In this document: positions 1 to 58,200 of the stretch, in pieces | Numbering within the stretch: position 1 is the stretch's first letter | How the letters are laid out: each line of letters opens with the position of its first letter | Assembly: GCF_030028105.1 (NCBI RefSeq) | Contig: NC_092379.1 | Span: 20,499,309-20,563,308, forward strand | Source: Mobula birostris | Taxonomy: Eukaryota | Length of the DNA stretch: 64,000 bases | Direction of reading: 5' to 3' | Position numbers and translations under genes: made by a program | The notes under the pieces: generated by a model | Told to the model about the DNA's origin: nothing | What the model saw: only the letters and a program-made list of their open reading frames with translations | Databases searched by the model: none

Positions 1-850
1 AGAGATTCATCACTCTCTGGGATAAACAGTTCCTCCTCATTTCCATCCTAAATCTACTCCCCCAAATCTTGAGGCTGTGTCCCCTAGTTCAATCCCATCA
101 CTGTGATTGCACCCTGCCTGTTCCTGAGTTTCACTCAAATGGACTCAGTTTCTCACCTCTCCATTATGTCTCCTCTGAGTGCAGCTGTGATATTGTCCCT
201 GACTATTAATGCAACACACCCCCTCTTTATCTCCTCCTCTATCTTTTCTAAAACTTCAAAAACCTGGTACATTAATCACCCATTCCCGCCCCTCTCTCAA
301 CCAAATTTCAGTAATGGCTATAACATCATAGTTCCATGTACGGATCCGTACTCTCATTTCATCACCCTTAACTATAATACTCCTAGGTATACCCAGAATT
401 ATTCTACACCTTCCCATCCTATGTCACCTCTTTCTAATGATTTCATTTAATTTTTTGCCAACACAGCCATATCACGCCTTCTGCCAACCGACCTGTCCTT
501 TCGATACAATGTGTATCCCTGGATATCAAGCTCCCAACTATAATCTTCTTTCAGCCACAATTCAGTGATGCCCACACTGTCATACATGCCAATCTGTAGC
601 TGTGCTACAAGTTAATCTATCTCATTCTGTATACTGTCTGAATTTAAAGATAACACTTTCAGTCCAGTATTCATCACCTGTTTTTGATTTTTGTCCCCCT
701 TTTGCATTGCAACTCATCCCATTGACTGCAGTTTTGCCCTGTCATCAGCCTCTGCTTGCTAGCAGTCTCACAAACACTGCCTTTGCTTGTAAGCCAACAA
801 CTCAACCCTCAGCCTTATCTCTCTATTTAACTGATTATCGATTAAAATTA
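1..850 (-). mobile_element. Internally deleted CR1/L3 LINE remnant (3' piece joined to endonuclease region and ORF1 end)
   Basis: Minus strand reads ...ITELWLKEDYSWELDIQGYTLYRKDR, an APE endonuclease N-terminus like that of the intact ORF at 13889. Confidence 0.8.
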
Positions 851-870: not shown

Positions 871-2043
871 CTAAATTTTTAGGAATTTGGTTTGATAAAA
901 AACTCACATGGTCAATATTTATTAAAGAAATAATAACCAAAAGTAAGAAAGTAAGGTTAATCAGTGGGGCAATGAGGACAACACCAGTGGTGGCAATGGA
1001 GGTGGAGTTGGGAGAGACACCTCTGGAACTGAGAAGATCACAGCTTGTGTTAACATATTAGGTAAACGTACAAGGGCCTGGAGAAAATCATCCAAGTAAA
1101 CAGCTTTTAGATCGATGCTGGGAAAAGGAAAGAAGGAAATTCAGAAATTTTGCACGGACTATTGAAGGGAAAGCAAAAAGGCCAGGAATTAGTAACAAGG
1201 CCCCAAGTGATACACTGCCTTTTCCTGGGCTGTCTCCATGACTGTGTGAAGCACCAGAGGTGGATCCTAAATTATTCAGAAAGAGATGGAAAAGTAGAGA
1301 AGTCAACATAAATCAAGATATAGTTGAATGTTATGTAAATAATATTAATTATGGATATTTACGAATTTACACAGATGTTTCAAAAAAGGTAATACTGTGG
1401 TAGATTAGGGGTAGGATTGGTAGTGCCTGATTTTAACATGAAAAAGCAGGTGAGGATAAACGATGATTTCTCAGTGGATGCAGGTGAAATGACAGCTGGA
1501 CTATTGGCTTTGCAGTGGGTGGAGAAAGTGAGAGCATGCGAGTTGTAATATTGTCTGATTCAAGCACAACAATCCGGAGTCTAAAAGATTTACATTAAGT
1601 GGGAAAACCAGAGGTTGTATGTGGGATAATACAAACCTTATTTCAACTTAAAATCGTATCCAGAGAGAAGTGGGGTAGTTTAGGAATGCACGAAAGAGTA
1701 GGAGGGAGGAGTGATAATATCGAGACTGAGGTTTGGGCACACAGGGTTAAAGTACATTGTTTTTCATAAAGAAACGTAACAATGGGAGGTGTGAATATTG
1801 TAATCAACAAGACATAATCAAGAAGGGATGGACGATTTAAAAGTTATCTCAATACGATTTAACATTAACAGCATTTTGCAGAAAGGATCAGAGGATTATT
1901 GCTTAAAATTATAGTTCTGTTACTTCAGAGCACAGATCTTTTTATATAAAATGATATATAAATATGGGGTCAAATATAAATATGTGGGTCATGACACGTT
2001 GACCCATAGTCCAGTTCAGAAGGGGCGGCAATGCACCTTAAAA
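871..2043 (+). mobile_element. Nimb/I-clade LINE 3' remnant with RNase H
   Basis: Frameshifted translation gives FLGIWFDKKLTW, GAMRTTPVVAMEVELGETPLELRR, IYTDVSK, GVGLVVPDF..FSVDAGEMTAGLLALQWVE and VVILSDS; ends with GGCGGCAATGCACC. Confidence 0.8.
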
Positions 2044-2770: not shown

Positions 2771-2774
2771 GAGA

Positions 2775-3480: not shown

Positions 3481-4128
3481 AGGGCAAGGAGTTATAGTGA
3501 GAGGGACAGAGGGAGAAAAAAGAGAGAGGAAAAAAATAAGTAATAAATAAACAAACAAACAAATAAGGGATGGAGGTGGGGCATTAACGGAAGTTAGAGA
3601 AGTCAATGTTCATGCCATCAGGTTGGAAGCTACCCAGATGGAATATAAGGTGTTATTCCTCCAACCTGAGTGTGGCTTCATCTTGACAGTAAAGGAGGCC
3701 GTGGATAGACATATCAGAATGAGAATGGGATGTGGAATTAAAATGTGTGGCCACTGGGAGATCCTGCTTTCTCTGGTGGACAGCCTTGCCCATCCTCTGG
3801 GCTCCCCTCCCCCTTTCTTTCTCCCTAGGCCTCCCGTCCCCTGATCCTCTCCCTTCTCCAGCCTCGTATCCCTTTTGCCAATCAACGTTCCAGCTCTTAG
3901 CTCAATCCCTCCCCCTCCTGTCTTCTCCTATCATTTCGGATCTGCCCCTCCCCCTCCCACTTTCAAATCTCTCACTGTCTCTTCTTTCAGTTAGTCCTGA
4001 TGAAGGGTCTCAGCCCGAAACGTCGACTGTACCTTTTCCTATTGATGCTGCCTGGTCTGCTGCGTTCACCAGCATTTTTTGTGTGTGTTGCTTGAATTTC
4101 CAGCATCTGCAGATTTCCTCGTGTTTGC
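3481..4128 (+). mobile_element. Penelope-like element with 5' inversion (GIY-YIG C-terminus inverted, 3' end direct)
   Basis: 3481-3782 is the reverse complement of the GIY-YIG end (HFNSTSHSHSDMSIHGL..RLGSFQPDGMNIDFSNFR); 3783-4128 is the direct PLE tail. Confidence 0.85.
3992..4029 (+). ncRNA. Minimal type I hammerhead ribozyme motif (PLE-type)
   Basis: AGUC-CUGAUGA-A-GGGU(CUCA)GCCC-GAAA-C-GUC/GACU; stem I AGUC:GACU, palindromic stem III ACGU; predicted cleavage after 4024. Confidence 0.75.
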
Positions 4129-4149
4129 AAAAACTTCTGTAGTTCTTTC

Positions 4150-8240: not shown

Positions 8241-8249
8241 AAAGGTAAA

Positions 8250-12524: not shown

Positions 12525-12607
12525 CAAAGTTGCTGGTCAACGCAGCAGGCCAGGCAGCATCTCTAGGAAGAGGTGTAGTCGACGTTTCAGGCCGAGACCC
12601 TTCGTCA
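12524..12607 (-). mobile_element. Short PLE tail fragment at a rearrangement junction, hammerhead core truncated
   Basis: Minus strand TGACGAAGGGTCTCGGCCTGAAACGTCGAC..CAGCAACTTTGA; matches the short PLE insertions at 27640 and 51521. Confidence 0.85.
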
Positions 12608-13328
12608 TCACTGAATTGTGGCTGAAAGAAGATTATAGTTGGGAGCTTGATATCCAGGGATACACATTGTATCAAAAGGACAGGCAGGTTGGCAGAAGGC
12701 GAGGTGTGCCTGTGTTGGCAAAAAAAATTGTGGTGTGCCTGTATTGGCAAAAAATTAAATGAAATCATTTGAAAGAGGTGACATAGGATGGGAAGGTGTA
12801 GAATAATTCAGGGTATACCAAGGAGTATTATGGTTAAGGGTGATGAAATGAGAGCATGGATCAGTACATGGAACTACAATGTTGTAGGCATTACTGAAAT
12901 TTGGTTGACAGAGGGGCAGGAATGGGTGATTAATGTACCAGGTTTTTGAAGTTTTAGAAAAGATAGAGGAGGAGATAAAGTGGGGGTATTGCATTAACAG
13001 TCAGGGACAATATCACAGCTGCACGCAGAGGAGACATAATGGCGAGGTAAGAAACTGAGTCCATTTGATTGAAACTCAAGAACAGGCAGGGTACAATCAC
13101 ACTGATGGGATTGAACTTGGGGACGCAGCCTCAAGATTTGGGGGAGTAGATTTAGGATGGAAATGAGGAGAAACTGTTTATCCCAGAGAGTGGTGAATCT
13201 CTGTGAATTCAATGCCTAATGAAGCAGTGGAAGCTACCTCAGTAGATATATTTATGACAAGGTTGGATAGATTTTTGCATAGTAGTGGAATTAAGGATCA
13301 TGGGGAAAAGGCAGGTAGGTGGAGATGA
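12606..13328 (-). repeat. Inverted duplication of 25745-26466 (CR1-derived sequence)
   Basis: Near-identical translated frames (MNSQRFTTLWDK.., MQYPHFISSS..) on opposite strands; shares a diagnostic ~27-bp tandem duplication with 26319-26370. Confidence 0.95.
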
Positions 13329-25659: not shown

Positions 25660-26750
25660 GATTAGAAATATATGGGAGTAGGCCATCTGGCTCGTTGAGC
25701 CTGCTCTGCCATTCAATAAGATCATGGCTGATCTGGCCATGGACTCATCTCCACATACCTGCCTTTTCCCCATGATCCTTAATTCCACTACTATGCAAAA
25801 ATCTAGCCAACCTTGTCATAAATATATCTACTGAGGTAGCTTCCACTGCTTCATTAGGCATTGAATTCACAGAGATTCACCACTCTCTGGGATAAACAGT
25901 TCCTCCTCATTTCCATCCTAAATCTACTCCCCCAAATCTTGAGGCTGCGTCCCCAAGTTCAATCCCATCTGTGTGATTGTACCCTGCCTGTTCTTGAGTT
26001 TCACTCAAATGGATTCAGTTTCTTACCTCGCCATTATGTCTCCTCTGCGTGCAGCTGTGATATTGTCCCTGACTGTTAATGCAATACCCCCACTTTATCT
26101 CCTCCTCTATCTTTTCTAAAACTTCAAAAACCTGGTACATTAATCACCCATTCCTGCCCCTCACTCAACCAAATTTCAGTAATGGCTACAACATTGTAGT
26201 TCCATGTACTGATCCATGCTCTCATTTCATCACCCTTAACCATAATACTCCTTGGTATACCCTGAATTATTCTACACCTTCCCATCCTATGTCACCTCTT
26301 TTGAATGATTTCATTTAATTTTTTGCCAACACAGGCACACTACAATTTTTTTGCCAACACAGGCACACCTTGCCTTCTGCCAACCTGCCTGTCCTTTCGA
26401 TACAATGTGTATCCCTGGATATCAAGCTCCCAACTATAATCTTCTTTCAGCCACAATTCAGTGATGCCCACACTGTCATACATGCCAATCTGTAGCTGTG
26501 CTACAAGTTAATCTATCTTATTCTGTATACTGTCTGAATTCAAAGATAACACTTTCAATCCAGTCTTCATCACCTTTTTTTGATTTTTGCCCCCCTTTTG
26601 CATCCCATTGACTGCAGTTTTGCCCTGTCATCAGCCTCTACTTGCCAGCAGTCTCACTAAAGACTGCCTTTGTTTGAAAATCAACAACTCGATCCTCAGC
26701 CTTATCTCTACATTTAATTGATTATCGATTAAAATTAGAAACTGCAGACC
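25660..26750 (-). mobile_element. CR1 remnant with intact 3' tail; paralog of 1-850
   Basis: GCCAGATGGCCTACTCCC tail at ~25675; same internal deletion junction as at ~90. Confidence 0.85.
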
Positions 26751-26751
26751 C

Positions 26752-27962
26752 TTTTAAATTTTTAGGAATTTGGTTTGATAAAAAACTCACATGGTCAACA
26801 TGTATTAAAGAAATAAAAACCCAAAGTAAGAAAGTAAGGTTAATCAGTGGGGCAATGAGGACAACACCAGTGGTGGCAATGCAGGTGGAGTTGGGAGAGA
26901 CACCTCTGGAACTGAGAAGATCACAGCTTGTGTTAACATATTGGGTAAACGTACAAGGGCCTGGAGAAAATCATCCAAGTTAACAGATTTTAGATCGATG
27001 CTGGGAAAAGGAAAGAAGGAAATTCAGAGATTTTGCACGGACTATTGAAGGGAAAGCAGAAATGACAGGAATTAGTAATAAGGCCCCAAGTGATACAGTG
27101 TCTTTTCCTGGGCTGACTCCATGACTGTGTGAAGCACCAGAGGTGGATCCTAAATTATTCAGAAAGAGATGGAAAAATAGAGAAGTCTACTTAAATCAAG
27201 ATATAGTTGAATGTTATGTAAATAATAATAATTAGGGATATTTACAAATTTACACAGATGTTTCAAAAACGGTAACACTGTTGTAGATTAGGGGTAGGAT
27301 TGGTAGTGCCTGATTTTAACATGAAAATGCAGGAGAGGATAAATGATGATTTCTCAGTGTATACAGGTGAAATGACAGCTGGACTATTGGCTTTGCAGTG
27401 GGTGGAGAAAATGAGACCATGCGAGTTGTAATATTGTCTGATTCAAGCACAACAATCCAGAGTCTAAAAGATTTGCATTCAGTGGGAAAACCAGAGGTTG
27501 TATGTGGGATAATACAAACCTTATTTCAATTTAAAATGGTATCCAGAGAGAAGTGGGGTAGTTTAGGAATGCAGGAAAGAGTAGGAAGGAGGAGGTGATA
27601 ATATCGAGACTGAGGTTTGGGCACGCAGGGTTAAAGTACCATACATCAAAGTTGCTGATGAACGCAGCAGGCCAGGCAGCATCTCTCGGAGGAGGTACAG
27701 TCGACGTTTCGGGCCGAGACCCTTCGTCAGGACATTGTACGGGGTTAAAGTACATTGTTTTTCATAAAGAAACACAACAATGGGAGGTGTGAATATTGTA
27801 ATCAACAAGACATAATCAAGAGGGGATGGACGATTTAAAAGTTATCTCAATACGATTTAACATTAACAGCATTTTGCAGGAAGGATCAGAGGATTATTGC
27901 TTTAAATAATAGTTCTATTACTTCAGAGCACAGATCTTTTTATATAAAAATGATATATAAAT
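26752..27962 (+). mobile_element. Nimb/I-clade LINE remnant, copy 2
   Basis: Paralog of 871-1975; reads FSVYTGEMTAGLLALQWVE. Confidence 0.8.
27640..27733 (-). mobile_element. ~94-bp hammerhead-headed PLE-derived insertion
   Basis: GTCCTGACGAAGGGTCTCGGCCCGAAACGTCGAC.. on the minus strand; TSD GGGTTAAAGTAC at 27628 and 27742; empty site in copy 1 at ~1745. Confidence 0.9.
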
Positions 27963-30230
27963 GATAGTGGGTGAGCATCTGGGGGACAGTGACCACCGCT
28001 CCCTGGCCTTTATAATTATCATGGAAAAGGATAGAATCAAACGGACAGGAAAATTTTTAATTGGGGAAAGGCAAATTATGAGGCTATAAGGCTAGAACTT
28101 GCAGGTGTGAATTGGGATGACGTTTTTGCAGGGAAATGTACGATGGACATGTGGTCGATGTTTAGAGATCTCTTGCGGGATGTAAGGGATAAATTTGTCC
28201 CGGTGAGGAAGATAAAGAATGGGAGGGTGAAGGAACCATGGGTGACAAGTGAGGTGGAAAATCTAGTCAGGAGGAAGAAGGCAGCATACATGAGGTTTAG
28301 GAAGCAAGGATCAGATGGGTCTATTGAGGAATATAGAGAAGCAAGAAAGGAGCTTAAGAAGGGGCTGAGAAGAGCAAGAAGGGGGCATGAGAAGGCCTTG
28401 GCGAGTAGGGTAAAGGAAAACCCCAAGGCGTTCTTCAATTATGTGAAGAAAAAAAGGATGACAGGAGTGAAGGTAGGACTGATTAGAGATAAAGGTGGGA
28501 AGATGTGGCTGGAGGCTGTGGAAGTGAGCGAGGTCTTCAATGAATACTTCTGTTCGGTATTCACCAATGAGAGGGAACTTGATGATGGTGAGGACAATAT
28601 GAGTGAGGTTGATGTTCTGGATCATGCTGATATTAAGGGAGAGGAGGTGTTGGAGTTATTAAAATACATTAGGACAGACAAGTCCCCGGGGCCTGACGGA
28701 ATATTCCCCAGGCTGCTCCACGAGGTGAGAGAAGAGACTACTGAGCCTCTGGCTAGGATCTTTATGTCCTCGTTGTCCACGGGAATGGTACCGGAGGATT
28801 GGAGGGAGGTGAATGTTGTTCCCTTGTTCAGAAAAGGTAGTAGGGATAGTCCGGGTAATTATAGACCAGTGAGCCTTCCGTCTGTGGTGGGAAAGCTGTT
28901 GGAAAAGATTCTTAGAGATAGGATCCGTAGGCATTTAGAGAATCATGGTCTGATCAGGGACAGTCAGCTTGGCTTTGTGAAGGGCAGATCGTGTCTAACA
29001 AGCCTGATAGAGTTCTTTGAGGAGGTGACCAGGCATATAGATGAGGGTAGTGCAGTGGATGTGATCTATATGGATTTTAGTAAGGCATTTGACAAGGTTC
29101 CACACGGTAGGCTTATTCAGAAAGTTAGCAGGCATGGGATCCAGGGAAGTTTGGCCAGGTGGATTCAGAATTGACTTGCCTGCAGAAGGCAGAGGGTGTT
29201 GGTGGAGGGAGTACATTCAGATTGGAGGATTGTGACTAGTGGTGTCCCACAAGGATCTGTTCTGGGACCTCTACTTTTCGTGATTTTTATTAACGACCTG
29301 GATGTCGGGGTAGAAGGGTGGGTTGGCAAGTTTGCAGACGACACAAAGGTTGGTGGTGTTGTAGATAGTGTAGAGGATTGTCGAAGATTGCAGAGAGACA
29401 TTGATAGGATGCAGAAGTGGGCTGAGAAGTGGCAGATGGAATTCAACCCGGAGAAGTGTGAGGTGGTACACTTTGGAAGGACAAACTCCAAGGCAGAGTA
29501 CAAAGTAAATGGCAGGATACTTGGTAGTGTGGAGGAGCAGAGGGATCTCGGGGTACATGTCCACAGATCCCTGAAAGTTGCCTCACAGGTGGGTAGGGTA
29601 GTTAAGAAAGCTTATGGGGTGTTAGCTTTCATAAGTCGAGGGATAGAATTTAAGAGTCGCAATGTAATGACGCAGTTCTATAAAACTCTGGTTAGGCCAC
29701 ACTTGGAGTACTGTGTCCAGTTCTGGTCACCTCACTATAGGAAGGATGTGGAAGCATTGGAAACGGTACAGAGGAGATTTACCAGGATGCTGCCTGGTTT
29801 AGAAAGTATGCATTATGATCAGAGATTAAGGGAGCTCGGGCTTTACTCTTTGGAGAGAAGGAGGATGAGAGGAGACATGATAGAGGTGTACAAGATAATA
29901 AGAGGAATAGATAGAGTGGATAGCCAGCACCTCTTCCCCAGGGCACCACTGCTCAATACAAGAGGACATGGCTTTAAGGTAAGGGGTGGGAAGTTCAAGG
30001 GGGATATTAGAGGAAGGTTTTTTACTCAGAGAGTGGTTGGTGCATGGAATGCACTGCCTGAGTCAGTGGTGGAGGCAGATACACTAGTGAAGTTTGAGAG
30101 ACTACTAGTCAGGTATATGGAGGAATCTAAGGTGGGGGCTTATATGGGAGGCAGGGTTTGAGGGTCGGCAGAACATTGTGGGCCGAAGGGCCTATACTGT
30201 GCTGTACTATTCTATGTTCTATGTTCTGTG
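27963..30230 (+). mobile_element. Young 5'-truncated CR1 specific to copy 2; ORF2 broken by a single stop
   Basis: ORFs 28107-29174 and 29196-30161 share a frame, separated by TGA (WIQN*LACRRQR); (TTCTATG)n tail. Confidence 0.93.
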
Positions 30231-30429
30231 NNNNNNNNNNNNNNNNNNNNNNNNNNNNNNNNNNNNNNNNNNNNNNNNNNNNNNNNNNNNNNNNNNNNNN
30301 NNNNNNNNNNNNNNNNNNNNNNNNNNNNNNNNNNNNNNNNNNNNNNNNNNNNNNNNNNNNNNNNNNNNNNNNNNNNNNNNNNNNNNNNNNNNNNNNNNNN
30401 NNNNNNNNNNNNNNNNNNNNNNNNNNNNN
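30231..30429. other. Assembly gap (~199 N)
   Basis: Run of N. Confidence 1.
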
Positions 30430-31030
30430 CCCACCTTCCGGTTTCTATCCTTGCCGCCGTTGGTTAAAAGGACCGACGGTCCTCCCACCCATCTTTCACG
30501 GGATTAGAGAAACATGCAGACCGCCTGTCGCTATTGGTTGATTGGTGGTCCGCACGTTGCCACCCATTGGTTTGCGCGCCTGCCGTCATACGACGTGCTC
30601 TACCATTGGTCAATTTTTTTTAAAAAAACGTGCTGAGATTGAATCGCATGAAAACATTTCGGAAAGGTCCATTTGGTTCACAAAATTAAAGTGGATGGTT
30701 CATCAAAGCTGTAAAAATTTGGAGGTTATAAATTTTATGATTGAACACAGAAAACTTTGGGAACAAAAGCGTAGCAGCCTTACGCCTGCACCGAATGGTG
30801 ATGTTTACCGGTCATTGCCGTATAAATTATTATTTCCGTACGGTATCTCTGAAGACTCGGGGAACATTGGGAACGAATTTGCTATTTCACGGTCACATGC
30901 TTTGATGTTTTGAAAAAAGAAAACTATGCTTAATGGCAGTTGCGATTGTCTTCCAAATACTGAAATGGAGACTTTAGATACCCAAACGCCCTTGCGCTTA
31001 GAATAAGCTCTATCTCGAGCGGAACTGGAG
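30430..31030. promoter_or_regulatory. Element X copy 2
   Basis: Paralog of 2174-2770; ATTGG at 30533, 30541, 30566 and 30605. Confidence 0.5.
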
Positions 31031-34000
31031 ACGAAGTAGGGTTGAGATCTTTCATGTGGACTGAAAGACAGAGGGGAGGTGACCGGTGTGAAGAGGCGAG
31101 GGAAGGGGTAGAGCAGGTGGTGTCAGGTGATAGGGGCCGCCAGGTGAGCGGGTGTACAGGCGGATGGGGAATGGAATAGTGGCAAAAGGCTGAAGATAAT
31201 GGAATCTGATGGGAGAGGACGGTGGAGCATGAACTAAAGGGAGGGAGGTGCGGAGGGCAGAGGGGAGGAGTGGGGACGGGAACCAGTGGGATGAGTGTGT
31301 GGGTTGTGTCACGGACTGGTATGGAAACACCCTTGAATAGAAAAGCCTACAAAAATGCATGGATACAGACTAGATCATCACAGGTAAAGCCCTTGTTGTT
31401 ACTGTGAACGAAGTCACCAGAGAGACAGTGAAGCTGGTGGTGATAGAAGTCTTTATTCAGCAAAACAAGCAGCAGAGATCATACTCAGACAGTCTTGGAA
31501 GAAGAGGCCTGCCTGACCCAATATTACATGACATTTTTATATGCTAAATATGAAACGTAACAGCAGGACAATTCTGTAGTTACAATGTTACTTAGAATAC
31601 TCCCTTTGAATTACATATAGTTTTCAAATACCTCCATCTTCACATCCACACTCCATGCACATAAAATGAATGTTAATTCCCACTGACTGTGGACCACATT
31701 CATGCACAAGCAGGTATCTGAGGTCGAATTTATCTGAGGGCAAGGAGTTATAGTGAGAGGGACAGAGGGAGAAAAAAAAAGAGAGGAAAAAAATAAGTAA
31801 GTAAGAAATAAACAAACAAACAAATAAGGGATGGGAGGTGGGGCATTAACGGAAGTTAGAGAAGTCAATGTTCATGCAGGTTGGAGGCTACCCAGATGGA
31901 ACATAAGGTGCTGTTCCTCCAACCTGAGTGTGGCTTCATCTTGATAGTAAAGGAGGCCGTGGATAGACATATCAGAATGAGAATGGGACGTTGAATTAAA
32001 ATGTGTGGCCACTGGGAGATCCTGCTTTCTCTGGTGGACAGCCTTGCTTATCCTCTGGGCTCCCCTCCCCCTTTCTTTCTCCCTAGGCCTCATGTCCCCT
32101 GATCCTCTCCCTTCTTCGGCCTCGTATCCCTTTTGCCAATCAACTTTCCAGCTCTTAGCTCAATCCCTCCTCCTCCTGACTTCTCCTATCATTTCGGATC
32201 TCCCCCTCCCCCTCCCACTTTCAAATCTCTCACTATCTCTTCTTTCAGTTAGCCTTGACGAAGGGTCTCAGCCCGAAATGTCAACTGTACCTCTTCCTAT
32301 AGATGCTGCCTGGTCTGCTGCGTTCACCAGCACTTTTTGTGTGTGTTGCTTGAATTTCCAGCATCTGCAGGTTTCCTCGTCTTTCCGTGGTGTCTCAGGA
32401 AGGCAGCGTCCATTATTAAAGACCTTCAGCACCCAGGGCTTGCACTTTTCTCACTGTTATCATCAGGTAGGAGATACAGAAGCCTGAAGGCACACACTCA
32501 GCGATTCAGGAACAGCTTCTTCCACTCTGCCATCCGATTCCTAAATGGACATTGAAGCTTTGGACGCTACCTCACTTTTTCATATACAGTATTTCTGTTT
32601 TTGCGCATTTTTTAATAATCTATTCAATATACGTAATTGATTTACTTGTTTGTTTATTATGTTTTATTTTATTTATTATTATATTTTTCTCTCTCTGCTA
32701 GATTATGTATTGCACTGAACTGCTGCTGTGAAGATAACAAGTTTCACGTCACATGCTGGTGATAACAAACCCGATTCTGATTCTGATTCTGAACCGGAGG
32801 TGATCAGGGAGTTTAAGGTAAAGAACCCTTAGGAACAAGTGATCACAATGTGATTGAGTTCATCTTGAAATTGGATAGGGAGAAAGTAAAGTCTGACATA
32901 GCAATATTTCAGTGGAGTAAGGGAAATTACAGTGGTATGAGGAGTTCACCAAAGTAAATTGGAAGGTTCTGCGAGCAGGGATGTCAGCAGAGCAGCAATG
33001 CCATGTGTTTCTGGGAAAAATGAGGAAGGTGCAGGACATGTGTATTCCAAATATGAAGAAATACTGAAATGGTAAAATAGTACAACTGTGGCTGATGAGG
33101 GAATTCAAAGCTGATGTAAAAACAAAAGAGAGGGCATACAACAAAGCGAAATGATTGGGAAGACAGAGGATTGAGAAGTTTTTAAAAACCTACAGAGAAC
33201 AATGAAAAGAATCATTAGAAGGGAAAAGATAAAATATAAAAGCAAGCTAGCAGTAATATCAAAGTGGATAGCAAAAGCTTTTTCTAGTATGTAGAAATTA
33301 AAAGAGAAATGAGAGTGGATATAGGACCGCTACCAAATGAGGCAGGAGAAATAATAATGGGGAACAAGTAGATGGCAGGTGAATTAAATGAAAATTTTGC
33401 ATCAGTCTTCACTGTGGAAGACACCAGCAGTATGCCCGATGTTGTAGTGTGGGAAGGAAGAGAAGTGGGTGCTGTTTCTATTACAAGAGAGAAGGCTGAA
33501 GACCTAAAAGATCATAAGTCACCCAGACCAGAGAAACTGTACCCTGGCGTTCTGAAAGAGGGAGCATTAGAGATTGTGGTGGCAGTGGAAATGATCCTTC
33601 AAAAATCATTGGACTCTGGCATGGTGCCAGAGGACTGGAAAATTGCAAATGTCACTCCACTCTTTAAGAAAGGAGGAAGACAGCAGAAAGGAAATTATAG
33701 ACAAGTTAGCCTGACCTCAATGGTTGGGAAGATGTTCGAGTCAATTGTCAAGGATGAGGTGACGGAATACTCAGTGACCAAGGACAACATAGGACTAAGT
33801 CAGCGCGGTTTCCATCAGGGAAAACCCTGCCTGACGAACTTGTCGGAATTTTTTGAGGAGATTACAAGTAGGATGGATAAACGGGATGTAGTGGATTTCG
33901 TATATTTGGACTTTCAGAAGGCTTTTTACAAGGTGCCACACATGAGGCTGCTTAGCAAGTTAAGAGCCCATGGTATTTCAGGAATATTACTAGGATGGTT

Positions 34001-36542
34001 GGAGCATTGGCTGATTGGAAGAAGTCAGCGAGTGGGAATAAAAGTGGCCTGGGCTGGTTGGCTGCCAGTGACTAGTGGTGTTCCGCAGGGGTCAGTGTTG
34101 GGCCCACATTTTTTATGCTGTATATAAATGATTTAGATAATGAAATAGATGGCTTTGTTGCCAAGTTTGCAGATGACACAAAGACTGGTGGAGGAACAGG
34201 TAGTGTTGAGGAAACGGGTATGATGCAGAAGGACAGACGGTTTTGGAGAATGGGCGAGAAATGTCAAATGAAATATAGTACTGGAAAATGAATGATCATG
34301 CACTTTGGTAGTAGAAATAAATGTGTGGAGTATTTTCTAAACGGAGAAAATCCAAAAATCTGAGATAAAAGGAACTTGAAAGGCCTTTTGCAGAACACCC
34401 TATAACCATATAACAATTACAGCACGGAAACAGGCCATCTCGGTCCTTCTGGTCCATGCCGAATGCTTACTCTCACCTAGTCCCACCGACCTGCACTCAG
34501 CCCATAACCCTCCATTCCTTTCCTGTCCATATACCTATCCAATTTTGCTTTAAATGACAATATCGAACCTGCCTCTACCACTTCTACTGGAAGCTCATTC
34601 CACACAGCCACCACTCTCTGAGTAAAGAAGTTCCCCATCGTGTTACCCCTAAACTTTTGCCCCCTAACTCTCAACTCATGTCCTCTTGTTTGAATCTCTC
34701 CTACTCTCAATGGAAAAAGCTTATCCACGTTAACTCTATCTGTCCCACTCATAATCTTAAATACCTCTATCAAGTCCCCACTCAACCTTCTACGCTCCAA
34801 AGAATAAAGACCTAACTTGTTCAACCTTTCTTTGTAAATCAGGTGCTGAAACCCAGGTAACATTCTAGTAACTCTTCTCTGTACTCTACTCAGTGCTCTG
34901 ATTTATGAAGGCCAGCATACCAAAAGCTTTCTTCACCACCCTATCCACATGAGATTCTACCTTCAGGGAACTATGCACCATTATTCCTGGATCACTCTGT
35001 TCTACTGCATTCTTCAATGCTGTACCATTTACCATGTATGCCCCATTTTGATTACTCCTATCAAAATATAAAGGTTAACTTTCAAGCAAGTCAAGTCAAA
35101 TCGTCACTTTTTATTGTCATTTCGACCATAACTGCTGGTACAGTACACAGTGAAAACAAGACAACGTTTTTCAGGACCATGGTGCTACATGAAACAATAC
35201 AAAAACCACACTGAACCTACATAAAACAACACAAAAACTACACTAGACTACAGATCTACCCAGGACTGCATAAAATGCAGAAAACAGTGCAGGCATTACA
35301 ATAAATAATAAACAAGACAATAGGCACAGTAGAGGGCAGTAGGTTGGTGTCAGTCCAGGCTCTGGGTATTGAGGAGTCTGATGGTTTGGGGGAAGAAACT
35401 GTTACATAGTCTGGTCGTGAGAGCCTGAACGCTTCGTTGCCTTTTGCCAGATTGCAGAAGGGAGAAGAGTTTGTATGAGGGGTGCGTGTGGTCCTTCATA
35501 ATGCTGTTTGCTTTACGGATGCAGCGTGTGGTGTAAATGTCTGTATTGGCGGGAAGAGAGACCCCGATGTCCTGAAAACTGTGCCCCCTGGTAGGTGATG
35601 GGTGGAAGTGACAAAAGGCTGAATATAATAGAATCTGATGGAAGATGAAGTGAGGCCTCAACAGTGTTTTATAAAGTCTCAACATTATATCCTTGTTTTA
35701 ATATTCCAGTCCTCTGGAAATGAATGCTAACATCACATTTGCCTTCCTCACCACAGACTCAACCTGCAAATTAACCTTTAGAGAATCCTGCTCAAGGGCT
35801 CTCTAATTCCTTTGTGCCTCAGAGTTTTGTATTTTCTGTCCACCTGGTCAAGAGTTAAAGCTTTAATTTCTTCTACCAAAGAGCATGACCATGTATTTGC
35901 TGACATTGTATTCCATCTGTCAGTTCTTTGCCCAGTCTGCATCTGCTGAAGTCTTTCTGTAGCCTCCCTAAAAAAAAACTACCTGCCCCTCCCCGATGAC
36001 AAACTCGCCAATAATTTCCTTTCTCTCTCTCTCTCTCTCCCTTCTTGAAGAGTGGAGTGACATTTGCAATTTTCCGGTCCTCCATTCCAGAATCCAGTGC
36101 TTCTTGAAAGATCATTACTAATGCCTCTATATTGTCTTCAGCCACCTCTTTCTGAATGTTGTGGTGTACACCATCTGCTCCAGGTGACTCATCTCCCTCA
36201 GTTTCTCAAGAATCTTCTCCATGGTAATGGTAGCACACTTCATGACCCCTGACACCTGGAACTTCTACCATGCTGATTGTGTCTTCCACAGTGAAGACTG
36301 ATGAAATGTATTTATTCAGTTCTTCGGCCATTTCCTTGTCCCTCATTACCACCCTCCCAGCATCGTTTTCCAGTGGGCCAATATGACCTCTCACCTCTCT
36401 TTTACACTTCATATATCTGAAGAGACTGTTGGTATCCTCATTAATATTATTGGCTAGCTTACTTTCGTATTCCACCTTTAACTTCTTACAGACTTTTTCA
36501 GTTAACTTATGCTGGTTCTCAAAAGCTTCCCAGTCCTCCAAC

Positions 36543-48010: not shown

Positions 48011-49769
48011 TTGTCTATTCCTGGAGTACATTCCTTCAATATCTGTGCCTTCCTCCAATGTCTGTCCCTTGGACTTACTCTGCTCAAATAAATGCTGGTG
48101 TTCATCACTGAGACAGCTGTTGTATTCTCTTCTATTCTTGGTTTGCATTAAATAGTAACTGTTTATGTTTTCTGCTTCGACTGTGTTTACCCCAGTATCT
48201 GTTGTATTTTCCTGCATTGACATACTTTTTCAGAAAGCTCTGTGCTGCTGACATCACATTAAAACATGTACATGGTCGATCTCCAGTTCTGAGTCACCTG
48301 TACTTGTACCAACAGCTCCACACTCTCTGATGGGGGATGCTGCAGGATGCACAAAGTTTCCTTCAGCTAAACACCGAGCAGGCCAAAGCCTTTGGTCCCC
48401 ACAGTGAGTTCTGTTCCAGGGCACTGATGCTGTTGAGTCACTTTTCAGTGATGTGAGAACAGAAATTCAGGCTGACTTGGCTGTTCACTGTAGTACAGAG
48501 GGACAGAGCTGCTGCCTTTCAGCTGAGACATTGAAGGGAGATTGTGTGTGCAATGGAGAAGCTCCTGTACCCACATTTTTCTATGATATGGAGTGGGGAG
48601 AATTCGGATAATGTGTTGAAATATGGATTGAGACACTCATTATGAAACATTCCATCAACATCTTGCTCTGGGATGTATAACAAGGTTCTGAGAAACTCTT
48701 CCAATGAGCCTCTGTGTTTTCCTGAATATCTTTCTCAGGGTGCAGCACCCCAGTGTTCCCACTGTGAGAAATTCCTTATGAACATGAGCAGTACATGTGG
48801 GGCTACACTCATATATTACTGGCTGGAAATCTCTCCGATATTTGTCCCGGGATGCATTACCCACTCGTACGTGGAGGCAGATGGAGTCTCTGCAGTGATG
48901 AGGGAACTAAGATGGGCTGAATGGCTTCCCTCCGTTTTATCAACTCCAGTCACTTCATGTTCTCCTTTTCTTTGTTTTTAATGAATACAATTTCAAATCA
49001 TGACATGACATAAACTCCAGTGGAAAACTGGAAGAAAAGCTATAGGCAATGACTTCCACAACATTTGATTTACAGAATTTGACAGAACATCCTCCACCAC
49101 ACTCCCCCTCCCCATGTCAACTTCTTGCTCCATAACAATAATAACCACTTCCTCAACTCCCTCTTCTCCATCACTAAACACACCCCCATTCCCCTGCTCC
49201 CCATTCCCAAGCCTTAACCCTGCCTTTCTCTCCCCTCCTGTAAACCCCCTCCAGTGTCACATATCCTGCCATTTTCCCAATGTATCATCCACCGCTGTCC
49301 CTCCGCCCACCGAACCGGCTCTGTGCCCCCATTTCCCATCTGGCATCCCCGGTACATTTAGAGGTTTATTTCCTGAAATGAGCAGTTGCAGTGCAGTAGC
49401 CTCAGATTGCCGAGTGAATGAGATGGAGACTCCATTTCCAAACATCGCAGCCACACGGGGATCTCTTGACTGAATGTGGGGCGTGTGTCTGCTGGTCACT
49501 GCTGAACCTGAAATATAGACAGGAGAGTATGATATTGTGTGACAAGGTGCAGCACAGACATTAACCTGTGAGGACCACATTGATGATGTACAGGTCATTG
49601 CAGAGGCTCAGCAATCTCCTCTCTCGCCTCCCACAGTAGTCTGGGGTACATCTCATCCGGTCCCGGCGACTTATCCAACTTGATGCTTTCCAAAAGCTCC
49701 AGCACATCCTCTTTCTTAATATCTACATTCTCAAGCTTTTCAGTCCACTGCAAGTCATCCCTACAATCA

Positions 49770-50971
49770 TCTGCTCTCAGGATGAGGCTTTTCATTCTAG
49801 GACAAGGGAGATGTCCTCCTTTTTTAAAGAAAGGGGCTTCCCTTCCTCCACTATCAACTCTGCTCTTAAACGCATCTCCCCCATTTCACGTACATCTGCT
49901 CTCACTCCATCCTCCTGCCACCCCACTAGGAATAGGGTTCCCCTGGTCCTCACCTACCACCCCACCAGCCTCCAGGTCCAACATATTATTCTCCGTAACT
50001 TCCGCCACCTCTAATGGGATCCCACCACTAAGCACGTCTTTCTCTCCCCACCCTCTGTGCTTTCCGCAGGGATCACGCCCTATGCGACTCCCTTGTCCAT
50101 TCGTCCCCCCCATCCCTCCCCACTGATCTCCCTCCTGGCACTTATCCGTGTAAGCGGAACAAGTGTTACACATGCCCTTACACTTCCTCCCTTACCACCA
50201 TTCAGGGCCCCAAACAGTCCTTCCAGGTGAGGCGACACTTCACCTGTGAGTCGGCTGGGGTGATATACTGCGTCCGGTGCCCCCAATGTGGCCTTTTATG
50301 CATTGGCGAGACCCGACGCAGACTGGGAGACCGCTTTGCTGAACACCTACGCTCTGTCCGCCAGAGAAAGCAGGATCTCCCAGTGGCCACACATTTTAAT
50401 TCCACATCCCATTCCCATTCTGACATGTCTATCCACGGCCTCTTCTACTGTAAAGATGAAGCCACACTCAGGTTGGAGGAACAACACCTTATATTCCGTC
50501 TTGGTAGCCTCCAACCTGATGGCATGAACATCGACTTCTCTAACTTCCGCTAATGCCCCACCTCCCCCTCGTACCCCATCTGTTACTTATTTTTATACAC
50601 ACATTCTTTCTCTCACTCTCCTTTTTCTCCCTCTGTCCCTCTGAATATACCCCTTGCCTATGCTCTGGGTTCCCCCCCTCTCATTGTCCCTGTCCCATGA
50701 TCCTCTTGTATCCCTTTTGCCAATCACCTATGCAGCTCTTGGCTCCATCCCTCCCCCTCCTGTCTTCTCCTATCATTTTGGATCTCCCCCTCCCCCTCCA
50801 ACTTTCAAATCTCTTACTCACTCTTTCTTCAGTTAGTCCTGACGAAGGGTCTCGGCCTGAAACTTTGACTGCACCTCTTCCTAGAGATGCTGCCTGGCCT
50901 GCTGCGTTCACCAGCGACTTTGGTGTGTGTTGCTTGAATTTCCAGCATCGTCAGAATTCCTGTTGTTTGCG
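49770..50971 (+). mobile_element. 5'-truncated Penelope-like element encoding a GIY-YIG endonuclease remnant
   Basis: VIYCVRCPQCGLLCIGETRRRLGDRFAEH; TSD CCTA(C/T)AATCA at 49760 and 50972; degenerate hammerhead at ~50834-50870. Confidence 0.92.
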
Positions 50972-51520
50972 CCTATAATCACCAAGATCCTTTTCCGTAG
51001 TGAATACTGAAGCTAAGTATTCATTAAGTACATGTGCTATTTCCTCCGGTTCCACACACACTTTCCCACTGTCACACTTGATAGGTCCTATTCATTCACG
51101 TCTTATCCTCTTGCTCTTCACATACTTGTAGAATGCCTTGGGATTTTCCTTAATCCTGCCCGCCAAGGCCTTCTCATAGCCCCTTCTGGCTCTCCTAATT
51201 TCCTTCTTAAGCTCTTTCCTGTTAGCCTTATAATCTTCTAGATCTCTAACATTACCTAGCTCTCTGAACCTTTCATAAGCTTTTCTTTTCTTCTTGACTA
51301 GATTTACTGCAGCCTTTGTACACCACGGTTCCTGTACCCTACCATAACTTCCCTGTCCCATTGGAATGTACCTATGCAGAACTCTACACAAATATCCCCT
51401 GAACATTTGCCACATTTCTTCCATACCTTTCCCGAGAACATCTGTTCCCAATTTAAGCTTCCAAGTTCCTGCCTGATAACCTCCTAATTCTCCTTACTCC
51501 AATTAAACACTTTTCTAACT

Positions 51521-51620
51521 TGCAACACACATAAAAGTTGCTGGTGAACGCAGCAGGCCAGGCATCATCTTCTCGGAAGAGGTGCAGTCGACGTTTCAGG
51601 CTGAGACCCGTCGTCAGGAC
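51521..51620 (-). mobile_element. 100-bp hammerhead-headed PLE-derived insertion
   Basis: GTCCTGACGACGGGTCTCAGCCTGAAACGTCGACT.. on the minus strand; TSD TTTTCTAACT at 51511 and 51621. Confidence 0.9.
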
Positions 51621-54671: not shown

Positions 54672-54812
54672 CAACACACACACTATGCTGGAAGAGTTCA
54701 GCAGGCCTGGTAGCACCTACAATAAAGAGTAAACCATCAAAGTTTCAGACTGATGAAGGGTCTTGGTCTGAATCATTGTTTGTTAACTCTTTTCCATAGA
54801 TGTTGCCTGGCA
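54672..54812. mobile_element. Degenerate palindromic (fold-back) PLE-tail element
   Basis: Left arm GCCTGGTAGCACCTACAATAAAGAGTAAAC mirrors right arm GTTAACTCTTTTCCATAGATGTTGCCTGGC around a central CTGATGAAGGG. Confidence 0.6.
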
Positions 54813-55259
54813 TGATCCTGCTTTTAGAATATTTCTTCTTTGGGATCCATCTGTATTGTGCCTTTCAAATTGCTCCCAGATTCTCCAGCCATTTCTGCTG
54901 TGCCGTCATCCCTTCTAGTGTCCCCTTCCAATCAATTTTGGCCCACTCCTCCCTCATACCTCTGTAATTCCCTTCAGTCCACTGTAATACTGACTTTAGA
55001 TTCTCCTTTTCAAATTAATTGCAGGGTGAATTACATCATATTATGATCACTGGCTCCCAAGTGTTCCCTTACCTAAAACTGCCCACTCTATTCTGGTTCA
55101 TTGCACAACGCCCAATCCAGAGTAATTGCCAAGTGGGCTCATTCACCCCTAATCTAAAAAAAAACTCGTAGGAATTCGACAAATTCTTTCCCTTGGGATG
55201 CGGCACCAAAATAACTTACTACAGCTTGGGCCATTTTGGCTGCACTGGTGAGCCGAACC

Positions 55260-58200
55260 AGCTACAAAGTAAATCAAAAACACCCAAGCACCAATCCCTA
55301 CCACCTACACCATGTCCATATCCCCCCTTCTTCCCTATATCCACTTGCCTCTCCAAACATCTCTAATGTACTTGCGTCTACCACCACACTAGGCAGCGCA
55401 TTCCAGACATCCTCCACTCTCTGCATATAAAACTCACCCCTCATATCCCCTTCGACCTACACCCCTTTACCTAAGATTCATTCCCTCCGGTATTACATGT
55501 TTCAACCCAGGGAAAGAGATACTCTCTGTCCACACAACACACACAAAATGCTGGTGCAACGCAGCAGGCCAGGCAGCATCTAAAGGAAGAAGTACAGTCA
55601 ACGTTTCAGGTCGAGACTCTTCATCAGGACAGGAGGGGGAGGGATGAAGTCAAGAGCTGGGAAGTTGATTGGAAAAAGGGATACAAGGCTGGGGAAGGGG
55701 GAGTATCATGGGACAGAAGGCCTTGGAAGAAAGAAGAGGGGAGGGGAGCACCAGAGCAAGATGGAGAACAGGCAAGGAGTTGTTGTGAGAGGGAAAGAGA
55801 GAAAAAAATTATAATAATGATAATAAATAATAAGAGATGGAGTAAGAAGGGGAGGAGGGGTATTAACAGAAGTTAGAGAAATCAATGTTCATGCCATCAG
55901 GTTGGAGGCTACCCAGACGGAATATAATGTGTTGTTCCTCCAACCTAAGTGTGGCTTCATCTCGAGAGTAGAAGAGGCCATAGATTGACATATCGGAATG
56001 GGAATGGGACGTAGGATTAAAATGTGTGGCCACAGGGAGATCCTGCTTCCTCTGGCGGACAGCGTGTAGGTGTTCAGTGAAGCAGTCTCCCAATCTGCGT
56101 CGGGTCTCACCAATATATAGAAGGCCACACTGGGAGCACCGAATACAGTATATCACACCAGCAGACTCACAGGTGAAGAGTCATCTCACCTGGAAGGACT
56201 GTCTGGGGCCCTGAATGGTGGTGAGGGAGGAAGTGTAAGGGCAGGTGTAGAACTTGTTCCGCTTACCAAGGTAAGTGCCAGGAGGGAGATCAGTGGGAAG
56301 GGATAGGGGGGATGAATGGACAAAGGAGTCGTGTAGGGAGCGATCCCTGTGGAAAGCAGAAAGTGGGGGGGGTAGGGAAAAATGTGCTTGATGCTGGGGT
56401 CTCATTGTAGGTGGCGGAAGTTATGGAGAATTATATGTTGGACACGGAGGCTGGTGGGGTGGTAGATGAGGACAAGAGGAACCCTATCCCTAGTGGGGTG
56501 GTGGGAGGATGGGGTGAGAGCAGGTGTGCGTGAAATGAGAGAGATGCATTTGAGGGTTGAGTCGATGGTGGAGAAAGGGAAGCCCCTTTCTTTAAAAAAG
56601 GAAGACACCTCCTTCGTCCTGGAATGGAAAGCCTCATTCTGAGAGCAGATGCGGTGGAGACGGAGAAATTGAGAGAAGGGGATGACACTTTTACAAGTAA
56701 CAGTGTGGGAACAGGAATACTCCAGGTAGCTTTGAGAGACGTGGGCTTATAGTAGACATCAGTAGACCCAAACTCTCTGTCCACTTTATCGTTGTCTCTC
56801 ATAATCTTGCAAACCTCTATCAGATTCTGCCACCCCTCAGCCTCCAATGCTCCAGAGAAAACAACCCAAGTTTATGTGGCCTCTCCTGCTTGCATGTTCC
56901 CTCGAAACCAGGCAGCATCCTGGCAAACTTCTTCTACACCCTCTCCAAAGCCTCAACTTCCTTCCAACGGTGGGGCAACCAGAACTGTATGCAGTACTTC
57001 AGTGTGGTCTAACCTGACTTTTATAAAAGTTGCAACATAACCTCCTGACTTTCGAACTCAATGCCTCGAATATTAAAAGCAAGCATTCCTTAAACCTTGT
57101 TAACTATCTTATTGACCTGTGTAGCCACTTTCAAGGAGTATGAACTTGGAACGCAAGATTTCTCTGCTCAACAACACTGTAAAAGACCTTGCTGTTAAAG
57201 GTGTACTGTCTCTTTTCATTTGCCCTCCCGGGGTGCAACACCTCACATTTATCTGGATTAGACTCCATTCTGCCATTTCTCAGTCCACATCTGCAGCTGA
57301 TCAATGTTGTGCTGTATTCTTTGCCAGTCTTCTACACTGCCAGCAACTGCACCATTCTTGGTATCATTCACAAATTTACAAACCCACCTGTCCACATTTT
57401 CATCCAGATCATTTATATACATTACAGACAGCAGAAGTACCAGCACAGATACCTACGGAACTCCACTAATTACAGACCTCCAGCTTGAACAAGTCCCCTA
57501 AACCATTACCCTCTGTCTTCTATTCACAAGCCAGTTCTGAATCCAACAGCAAATTTGCTACGGATCCCATGTATGTTAATCTTCTGGATTAGCCTCCCAC
57601 GGGGGACTTTGTCAAATGCCCTCCTAAAATCCATGTAGACAACAACCACTGCCCCACCCTCATCAATCTGTCTTGTCACCTTGTCAAAAAACTCTATCAA
57701 GTTGGTAAGGCACAACCTACCACGCTTAAAGCCATGCTGTCTCACCCCAATTAGGCCATGGGTTTCCAAATGCTCAGATATCCTATCCTTATGATTTTTA
57801 TTGGGCAATTTCCCTTCAGTTGAAGTGAGATTTACTGGTCCATAGTTCCCACAATTTTCCCTTTTTCCCTTCTTAAATCGAGGTACAATATTAGCCACTC
57901 GCCAGTCTTCAGGGACCTCACCTGTGGCGAGAGAGGACACAAAGATGCTGGTCAAGGGCCCAGCAAGCTCACCTCTTGCATCCTTCAATAACCTGGAGTA
58001 AATTACATCTGGCCCTGAGGACTTATCCATCTTAATCCTGATGAGGAGGTCCAACACTTCTTTCTCCTTGACCTCTAAATGCCTGAATGTATTTATATAC
58101 TCAGCACTGATCTCCTGGTCCTCCATATCCTTTTCCTTGGTAAGTACTGAACCAAAGTACTCACTTGGCACCTCACTCACATTCTCTGCATTCAAGCAAA

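What the first reader, a model, noticed from the sequence alone, without database searches (positions are those of the whole stretch)
27628..27753. ~100-bp hammerhead-headed insertions with TSDs: a candidate retrozyme-like non-autonomous family
Two independent insertions (27640-27733, TSD 12 bp; 51521-51620, TSD 10 bp) consist only of the hammerhead plus ~60 nt of PLE tail, and both begin at exactly the same base, GTC-CTGACGA, the first strand of stem I. A third fragment (12524-12607) covers the same span. Random 5' truncation would rarely coincide. Either a tiny ribozyme-headed RNA is mobilised in trans by PLE RT/GIY-YIG, or RT stops or switches at the folded ribozyme. The 5' end is not the predicted cleavage site, so simple self-cleavage does not explain it.
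Basis: partly seen in the sequence, partly recalled or inferred. Interest (0 to 1): 0.72.

Follow-up and report, generated by a model that had tools for sequence, protein, structure and literature searches.

The report
Short Penelope retrotransposon stubs starting at hammerhead
The ~100-base insertions are real but are the shortest products of an abundant Penelope-like retrotransposon, not a separate ribozyme-carrying element. Their starts do cluster at the upstream edge of the hammerhead motif, a small unexplained detail of how this element copies itself.

Summary
Two minus-strand insertions (27640-27741 and 51522-51620) have 11-14 bp target-site duplications. One also has an empty site in a paralogous segment (1741-1755). 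Both begin at GTC|CTGAYGA, give or take 1 nt.

They are the last ~95-100 nt of a Penelope-like element (PLE). Locus C (49769-50970) shows the same unit about 280 nt downstream of a GIY-YIG endonuclease ORF. The motif is the published minimal PLE hammerhead, with no helix III and an ACGU palindrome. No Rfam model detects it.

The 3' ends fall in two classes, +83..100 and +135. This matches the PLE "tail" signature, explained by two internal reverse-transcription start sites (PMC11167929).

The 5' clustering looks real. Four of about eight independent ends lie at -1..+6, and a 74-nt deletion in locus D ends at the same GTC. By simulation, chance gives P of 0 to 0.03.

I found no sign of a separate lineage. 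No substitution is diagnostic of the short copies, and long copy C is as close to them as they are to each other. By analogy with Anolis Poseidon, the short copies also lack RNA 3' of the start site that the enzyme needs.

The most likely cause is that the template RNA ends at the hammerhead edge. This is unproven, because I could not obtain a genome-wide histogram of 5' ends. The scan has noted the same pattern elsewhere in this genome (s1-145277, s1-145758).

The parts
27628..27639 (.). left target-site duplication of short copy 1
   Evidence: Identical 12 bp at 27742-27753. A single copy is present in the paralogous empty site 1741-1755.
27640..27733 (-). short copy 1: PLE terminal unit, with the minimal hammerhead (27700-27733) plus about 60 nt up to the proximal RT start region
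   Evidence: nhmmer model positions 1-97, E 6e-31. The core matches with 0 mismatches. Six CpGs are retained.
27734..27741 (.). 8-nt filler between the 5' end of short copy 1 and the right TSD
   Evidence: Absent from the empty-site paralog and from other copies. It partly repeats the bases that follow the TSD.
27742..27753 (.). right target-site duplication of short copy 1
51510..51521 (.). left TSD of short copy 2
   Evidence: The same 12 bp recur at 51620-51631.
51522..51620 (-). short copy 2: hammerhead plus about 66 nt
   Evidence: nhmmer model positions 1-98, E 8e-31. The 5' end is ambiguous by 1-2 nt because it overlaps the TSD.
12525..12608 (-). short fragment 3 (+4..6 to +83) at a rearrangement junction
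   Evidence: Homology to the paralog ends at 12524 (equivalent to 37794). The inverted-repeat arm starts at 12606 with TG microhomology. There is no TSD.
49769..50970 (+). locus C: 5'-truncated PLE, comprising the GIY-YIG ORF end (50227-50553), 282 nt of pLTR, the hammerhead at 50836, and a unit with tail reaching +135
   Evidence: The ORF carries the GIY-YIG motif. An empty site with a 9-10 bp TSD lies in the paralog at 46775-46784.
55535..56651 (-). locus D: 5'-truncated PLE with a tail-less 3' end (+96) and a 74-nt internal deletion whose 3' edge is the GTC that starts the hammerhead
3483..4128 (+). locus A: PLE end whose 5' part (3483-3784) is inverted relative to the element, in the manner of twin priming; the tail reaches +135; its paralog B is 31739-32386
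54673..54815 (.). old head-to-head stub: two units joined near their 5' ends, the right arm starting at +3/+4
1741..1755 (.). empty target site for short copy 1 in the paralogous segment

Best explanation
The ~100-bp pieces are ordinary insertions made by an abundant Penelope-like retrotransposon with a GIY-YIG endonuclease.

**How they form.** The enzyme nicks the target, leaving 10-14 bp staggered cuts that become the TSDs. It starts reverse transcription inside its own RNA at the nearer of two start regions, +83..100 in a GU-rich loop. The farther region is at +135. It then copies only about 95 nt, through the 34-nt minimal hammerhead.

**Where the copies stop.** The copies end preferentially at the upstream edge of the hammerhead (-1..+6). 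The most likely reason is that a large share of template RNAs begin there. The bases TTAGTCC fit the loose initiator consensus, with the start at the A just before GTC. On this view the short pieces are run-off cDNAs of the 5' leader of PLE transcripts.

**What they are.** They are dead-on-arrival by-products, not a lineage with its own master copies.

**Shown and inferred.**
- Shown: the insertion itself, PLE identity, the two classes of 3' end, and the clustering of 5' ends in this window.
- Inferred: the RNA 5' end as the cause, and the immobility of the short copies.
For: **Insertion is proven**
- TSDs flank both short copies, and short copy 1 has an empty-site paralog.

**PLE identity**
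- The same unit lies 282 nt downstream of a GIY-YIG ORF on the same strand in locus C, and likewise in locus D.
- The ORF matches PLE endonuclease fragments, including one in a stingray protein, and weakly matches Pfam GIY-YIG.

**Minimal-hammerhead features from PMC4209133 are all present** (for the criteria)
- CUGANGA and GAAA boxes.
- An extra base between positions 9 and 10.1.
- The G10.1-C11.1 pair.
- A palindromic ACGU instead of helix III.
- Helix II is paired in 97% of cells.

**3' ends**
- They lie at +83, +90-94, +96 and +100, against +135 twice.
- In Anolis Poseidon the tail spans +85..119 from the AUG, which sits about 10 nt into the motif. The geometry is the same.

**5' clustering**
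- Ends lie at 0, -1..+1, +4..6 and +3/4, and the deletion in D ends at GTC. The chance probability is at most 0.03.

**Short and long copies made together**
- Both C (1.2 kb) and short copy 1 inserted after segmental duplications that are now 95-97% identical.
- No column is diagnostic of the short copies, and C is 90-94% identical to them.

**Support from the Anolis element in vitro**
- Short RNAs spanning only this region are competent templates.
- The enzyme runs to the 5' end of longer templates.

**Abundance**
- 163,000 and 194,000 Logan contigs were laid on the reference.
- Depth roughly halves past +90, which fits a majority of tail-less ends.
- Two joints restart at 50835 after an extra G.
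Against: - No RNA data show a 5' end at this base.
- In Drosophila virilis Penelope the transcription start lies about 120 nt upstream of the hammerhead, with an intron between them. A start at the hammerhead edge would therefore be a family-specific feature.
- The initiator match is weak evidence, at about 1 in 128 per site.
- Short copy 1 starts at G with a filler rather than at the A.
- The depth step at 50836 is ambiguous. It is 1.6-1.9x by bins but only 1.0-1.3x by per-position depths, and the upstream bins are noisy.
- Only about eight independent ends were available, all from one 64-kb window.
- The need for RNA beyond the start site is extrapolated from a Poseidon-clade element in a lizard.
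Confidence: 0.6

Rival explanations
1. The reverse transcriptase itself leaves or switches template at the upstream boundary of the protein-bound hammerhead and leader region. This would resemble the template boundary of telomerase, whose reverse transcriptase is the sister group of PLE RTs. The RNA need not end there.
For: - Ends are scattered over -1..+6 rather than falling on one base.
- Locus D looks like a jump from GTC to an upstream GTC.
- Fragment 3 is joined to foreign DNA at this point.
- The first 34 nt fold into a hairpin whose base is the first G.
- PMC11167929 suggests that the core must be unfolded for reverse transcription to pass.
Against: - In vitro, the Anolis enzyme gives products that shorten with the template's 5' end, and hammerhead mutants do not change product size. 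It therefore reads through.
- A structural block should act at the 3' side of the fold (+34), where no end was seen.
- The folds are no more stable than shuffled sequence (z +0.5 to -1).
Confidence: 0.17
2. The short pieces are a distinct non-autonomous, retrozyme- or SINE-like family. It would have its own transcribed master copies, mobilised in trans by the PLE enzyme.
For: - Discrete size classes recur across the genome (the notes s1-145277 and s1-145758 are leads only).
- Short copies 1 and 2 share one base (G in CCGAG) that the others lack.
- PLE-derived non-autonomous elements are known (Chlamys MRC1).
Against: - No column is diagnostic for all short copies, and long copy C falls among them.
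- No tandem arrangement, no tRNA, 7SL or 5S head, and no Rfam match.
- Each copy ends at the RT start site, so it lacks the downstream recognition region inferred.
- The copies differ from each other by about 10%, which fits many sources rather than one.
Confidence: 0.13
3. The shared 5' end is a coincidence of ordinary random 5' truncation in a family whose copies are mostly very short.
For: If truncation is steep (mean 80-150 nt), two of eight ends agree within 2 nt in 25-40% of simulations.
Against: - Four ends within 8 nt, plus the deletion edge in D, give P of at most 0.03 even under the steepest model.
- Independent readers reported the same start in other windows (unchecked).
Confidence: 0.08

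Closest known systems
Solo minimal hammerheads of truncated Penelope-like elements (Cervera and de la Pena 2014, PMC4209133)
   Same: - The same motif architecture.
- The same location in the pLTR, downstream of the RT-EN ORF.
- Found mostly as single dispersed copies, described there as 'probably related to truncated PLEs'.
- Opposite-strand pairs 100-700 bp apart.
   Different: That paper does not report where the truncated copies start. Here the starts cluster at the first bases of the motif.
Poseidon (PAc) of Anolis carolinensis: internal initiation of reverse transcription and the 'tail' (Frangieh et al. 2024, PMC11167929)
   Same: - The hammerhead lies at the pLTR-ORF junction.
- There are two start sites about 35 nt apart, roughly 95 and 130 nt from the start of the motif.
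- Short RNAs covering only this region work as templates.
- No reads begin or end at the hammerhead cleavage site.
   Different: - A different clade and host.
- The start region here is GU-rich in the RNA, not AC-rich.
- The ORF does not start inside the hammerhead here (in-frame stop by about +108).
- A preferred 5' end was not described for PAc.
Non-LTR retrozymes of animals (PMC7229834; bioRxiv 10.64898/2026.07.22.740005)
   Same: They are short, hammerhead-bearing, PLE-related and non-coding, with TSDs longer than 4 bp. Monomeric copies exist.
   Different: - Retrozymes are tandem repeats of 150-450 bp with canonical type I hammerheads.
- They are expressed as circular RNAs cut at the ribozyme site.
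- The pieces here are solo and about 100 nt, carry a minimal hammerhead, and end 31 nt away from the cleavage site.
Sm-alpha / Sj-alpha SINE-like elements of schistosomes
   Same: They are a dispersed short retroposon carrying a hammerhead.
   Different: Those have a Pol III-type promoter ahead of a canonical hammerhead and are about 330 nt long. No such promoter or head is present here.
5'-truncated and twin-primed LINE-1 insertions
   Same: Both show target-primed products with TSDs, variable 5' ends, filler or microhomology at the 5' junction, and inverted 5' segments (locus A).
   Different: The 3' end here is set by internal initiation rather than a poly(A) tail. The 5' ends show a sharp hotspot only about 95 nt from the start site.

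Membership tests
Penelope-like element, terminal (3') copy | GIY-YIG endonuclease ORF upstream on the same strand | tested here: met
   - The ORF at 50227-50553 carries the GIY-YIG pattern and lies 282 nt upstream of the unit.
- It gave 22 PLE-type endonuclease fragment hits at E 1e-12 to 1e-37.
- Pfam GIY-YIG scored E 0.004, below the curated cut-off.
Penelope-like element, terminal (3') copy | PLE-type reverse transcriptase | tested here: inconclusive
   Only a frame-shifted C-terminal remnant (49769-50226) is present, and it has no Pfam hit. There is no full-length copy in the window.
Penelope-like element, terminal (3') copy | Two alternative 3' ends 30-40 bp apart ('tail') | tested here: met
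   The ends lie at +83..100 (four copies) and +135 (two independent copies). Depth falls 2.3x after +90. This compares with +85 and +119 in PAc.
Penelope-like element, terminal (3') copy | Heavy 5' truncation, TSDs, and inverted or head-to-head arrangements | tested here: met
Hammerhead ribozyme (minimal PLE variant) | Core boxes, a base between positions 9 and 10.1, the G10.1-C11.1 pair, and palindromic 15.2-16.2 without helix III | tested here: met
   Shown by the alignments. Helix II is paired in 97% of cells and helix I in 75%. The criteria are quoted.
Hammerhead ribozyme (Rfam covariance models) | Score at or above the gathering threshold of any Hammerhead model | tested here: not met
   No match at gathering thresholds across the whole window, and none at E up to 10 in 27500-27900. 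This is expected for a motif without helix III.
Hammerhead ribozyme | Self-cleavage after GUC (+31), probably as a dimer | not testable with these tools
   A solo short copy has only 3 bp of helix I and no partner. Published minimal hammerheads cleave poorly in vitro.
Non-LTR retrozyme | Tandem units, each with a canonical type I hammerhead | tested here: not met
   All window copies are solo or head-to-head. Only two low-depth tandem-like joints appear among more than 160,000 contigs.
Non-LTR retrozyme | Unit boundaries at the ribozyme cleavage site, with a circular RNA intermediate | tested here: not met
   The ends lie at 0 and +83..135, not at +31. Circular RNA could not be tested.
SINE | A Pol III head derived from tRNA, 7SL or 5S | tested here: not met
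   No tRNA-like gene and no Rfam family.

The most novel reading that the evidence does not exclude
The upstream edge of the minimal hammerhead marks the 5' end of the RNA that the PLE enzyme copies in vivo. That end could be a transcription start driven by an internal promoter, or a telomerase-like template boundary. If so, 'leader-only' cDNAs of about 100-140 nt are a major, defined product of PLE activity. This would give the long-unexplained PLE hammerhead a positional role as the head of the template, rather than a role as a cutter.
Probability: 0.3. Interest if true: 0.6.

Novelty: new member of a known kind. Interest (0 to 1): 0.38.

Why it matters
The role of hammerheads in endonuclease-bearing PLEs is still open (PMC8557442 calls it unclear). 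The only biochemical study found no cleavage-site ends in vivo.

A sharp genomic hotspot of 5' ends at the first bases of the motif would be a cheap, testable footprint. It would show where PLE templates begin, or where the enzyme lets go. This genome carries the family in more than 100,000 contig-level pieces.

If the hotspot does not survive a genome-wide census, these are ordinary truncated PLE copies with no further interest.

Tried and rejected
**Searches that gave nothing useful**
- Rfam found no hammerhead, either at gathering thresholds or with permissive filters. The motif is the minimal variant.
- Read laying:
  - The two raw-read DNA runs (X21, X22) laid nothing, so they are not from this organism.
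  - The contig runs listed only 12 loose ends, all subfamily divergences in the ORF/pLTR region.
  - No 5'-end histogram came out, and the depth step at 50836 is ambiguous.
- A stingray contig found through a PLE-derived protein came back without DNA.
- A word search with the antisense ORF of the unit, meant to sample other copies through called ORFs, found no candidate.
- Exact-pattern scans of metagenome contigs (twice) and viral contigs found nothing.
- No empty site could be found for short copy 2, because its paralog carries different sequence there.

**Explanations considered and dropped**
- Self-cleavage: the cut is predicted at +31 and no end lies there.
- A type-III-like register cutting after the first GUC: there is no helix I.
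- Trans cleavage at UUA|G: the arms do not pair.
- Pol III SINE: there is no head.
- Splicing as the cause of the 74-nt gap in locus D: the segment starts with GT but ends TA, and the nearest AG sites give junctions that differ from D by 1-3 nt. This holds despite a strong branch point, pyrimidine tract and CAG ending 3 nt before GTC.

**Left untouched.** The N run at 30231-30429 was not filled or looked up.

Full report
**What is there.** A 31-nt hammerhead core pattern occurs five times in the window against none expected. nhmmer with a model of the unit finds seven clear copies plus an old head-to-head pair.

I number positions from the G of GTC|CTGAYGA, which is 0. The independent copies are:
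- **A**: 3483-4128, plus strand. Its segmental paralog B is 31739-32386.
- **Short3**: 12525-12608, minus strand.
- **Short1**: 27640-27733, minus strand.
- **C**: 49769-50970, plus strand.
- **Short2**: 51522-51620, minus strand.
- **D**: 55535-56651, minus strand.
- **Stub**: 54673-54815.

**The insertions are real.** Short1 is flanked by a 12-bp duplication (27628-27639 and 27742-27753). A paralogous segment, 95-96% identical, carries the intact target at 1741-1755. This proves an insertion of about 102 bp that is younger than the duplication.
- Eight bases (27734-27741) lie between the element's first G and the right duplication. They belong to neither the element nor the target, and they partly repeat the bases after the target site.
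- Short2 is flanked by cttttctaactt (51510-51521 and 51620-51631). The duplication overlaps the element's first bases, so its 5' end is -1, 0 or +1.
- Short3 is not a simple insertion. It covers +4..6 to +83 and has no duplication. It sits where this segment stops matching its paralog (12524, equivalent to 37794) and an inverted copy of 25745-26466 begins, with TG microhomology.

**What the unit is.** In locus C the same unit lies 282 nt downstream of the stop of an ORF (50227-50553) on the same strand.
- That ORF has the GIY-YIG endonuclease pattern.
- It matches PLE-type endonuclease fragments at E down to 2e-37. One of these is exonised in a stingray protein.
- It matches Pfam GIY-YIG weakly.
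- Locus C is itself an insertion with a 9-10 bp duplication and an empty paralogous site at 46775-46784.

The unit is therefore the 3' terminus of a Penelope-like element. The hits place the host among cartilaginous fishes.

**The hammerhead.** No Rfam model detects the motif. It does have every feature of the minimal PLE hammerhead of Cervera and de la Pena:
- both core boxes;
- an extra A after position 9;
- a G-C pair opening helix II;
- no helix III, with an ACGU palindrome that could form helix III between two molecules.

Helix II is paired in 97% of cells across eight copies. Cleavage would follow GUC at +31. Alone, the first 34 nt fold into a hairpin that buries the core.

**The 3' ends.** They fall at +83 (short3), +90-94 (short1), +96 (D) and +100 (short2), all inside a GU-rich stretch. 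Loci A and C both end at +135. Contig depth drops 2.3-fold after +90.
- This is the known PLE "tail".
- For Poseidon of Anolis, Frangieh et al. showed that reverse transcription starts at two internal sites of the RNA that bound a ~34-nt tail at +85..119 from the AUG.
- Their consensus shows that AUG about 10 nt into an equivalent hammerhead. The geometry is therefore nearly the same here.
- In the tailed copies, a 7-bp stem (GAUGCUG with CAGCAUC) encloses the proximal start region.

**The 5' ends.** Apart from the long copies, the ends lie at 0 (short1), -1..+1 (short2), +4..6 (short3) and +3/4 (right arm of the stub). The stub's left arm starts near +20.
- Locus D lacks 74 nt of pLTR (C coordinates 50762-50835). 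The 3' edge of that gap is the same GTC, with 3-nt microhomology.
- In simulations of eight random ends, two agreeing within 2 nt is unremarkable (P 0.03-0.4).
- Four within 8 nt has P between 0 and 0.03, depending on how steep truncation is.
- Other readers of this genome noted the same start in other windows. These are leads that I could not check.

- Read laying placed 163,000 and 194,000 contigs but printed only twelve loose ends, none at this site.
- The depth step at 50836 is 1.6-1.9x by bins but 1.0-1.3x by per-position depths.
- Other routes to more copies failed.

**Is it a separate family?** The evidence points the other way.
- No alignment column separates the three short copies from the long ones.
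- Long copy C is 90-94% identical to them, as close as they are to each other.
- C and short1 both postdate young segmental duplications. Long and short products were therefore being made in the same period.
- Every inserted unit ends at the start site. It thus lacks the RNA beyond, which the Anolis enzyme needs (minimum template to +172). This is an inference across clades, but if it holds, terminal units cannot be copied again.
- There is no tandem arrangement, no Pol III head and no tRNA-like sequence.

**Why the hotspot?**
- Self-cleavage would give ends at +31, and none is seen. Frangieh et al. likewise found no such ends.
- A block by the folded ribozyme should act on its 3' side. In vitro, the Anolis enzyme reads through the hammerhead to the end of longer templates, and ribozyme mutants do not change product size.

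That leaves an RNA that begins at the hammerhead edge as the simplest reading. Three observations fit it:
- the bases TTAGTCC fit the loose initiator consensus, with the start at the A before GTC;
- short1 has filler bases at its 5' junction;
- D looks like a jump from the end of one template to a GTC further upstream, and two contig joints restart at 50835 after an extra G.

All of this is suggestive only. Against it, Drosophila virilis Penelope starts transcription about 120 nt upstream of its hammerhead, with a 75-nt intron ending at helix I. Here a strong branch point, pyrimidine tract and CAG end 3 nt before GTC, but the gap in D is not a clean GT-AG excision.

**Verdict.** The pieces are ordinary, very short products of a known kind of retrotransposon, not a retrozyme-like family. 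The clustering of their starts at the hammerhead edge is probably real. It is not described in the papers I could read, and it is worth one genome-wide census. The N run at 30231-30429 was left untouched.

Noticed in passing
window 12606-13328 and 25745-26466: The hammerhead fragment at 12525-12608 forms the exact junction between unique sequence and a ~0.72-kb inverted copy of 25745-26466. The paralog at 37794 has neither. This suggests that a PLE cDNA was captured at, or caused, an inverted duplication or rearrangement.
   Followed up: partly
window 3483-4128 (paralog 31739-32386): In locus A, the 300 bp upstream of the pLTR are the GIY-YIG region in inverted orientation, abutting the direct part at the same element position. 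This is the pattern that twin priming gives in LINE-1. It fits the report that the PLE enzyme extends both target strands.
   Followed up: partly
window 55628-55631 (locus D), equivalent to C 50762-50835: A 74-nt segment just upstream of the hammerhead is missing, between two GTC triplets. Its size and position recall the 75-nt intron of Drosophila virilis Penelope, but its ends are GT..TA.
   Followed up: partly
window 50810-50835 and 3968-3993: A branch-point-like CTCAC, a pyrimidine tract and CAG end 3 nt before the hammerhead in the long copies. This looks like a strong splice acceptor that could trap exons when the element sits in introns.
   Followed up: no
window 1-12500 vs 25880-37800; 46715-47531 vs 49700-52100: The window is built of segmental duplications with 25-28 kb spacing and 92-99% identity. 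These conveniently supply empty sites for young insertions.
   Followed up: partly
window 13889-16687 (+): An uninterrupted 932-aa ORF carries an apurinic-type endonuclease and a reverse transcriptase (Pfam E 2e-33). It is a possibly intact LINE inside the inverted-repeat-bracketed segment.
   Followed up: no
window 54673-54815: An old head-to-head pair of two units joined near their 5' ends. It is of the kind that other reports on this genome describe as fold-back Penelope stubs.
   Followed up: partly
window 30231-30429: A run of 199 N (assembly gap or masked), left untouched.
   Followed up: no
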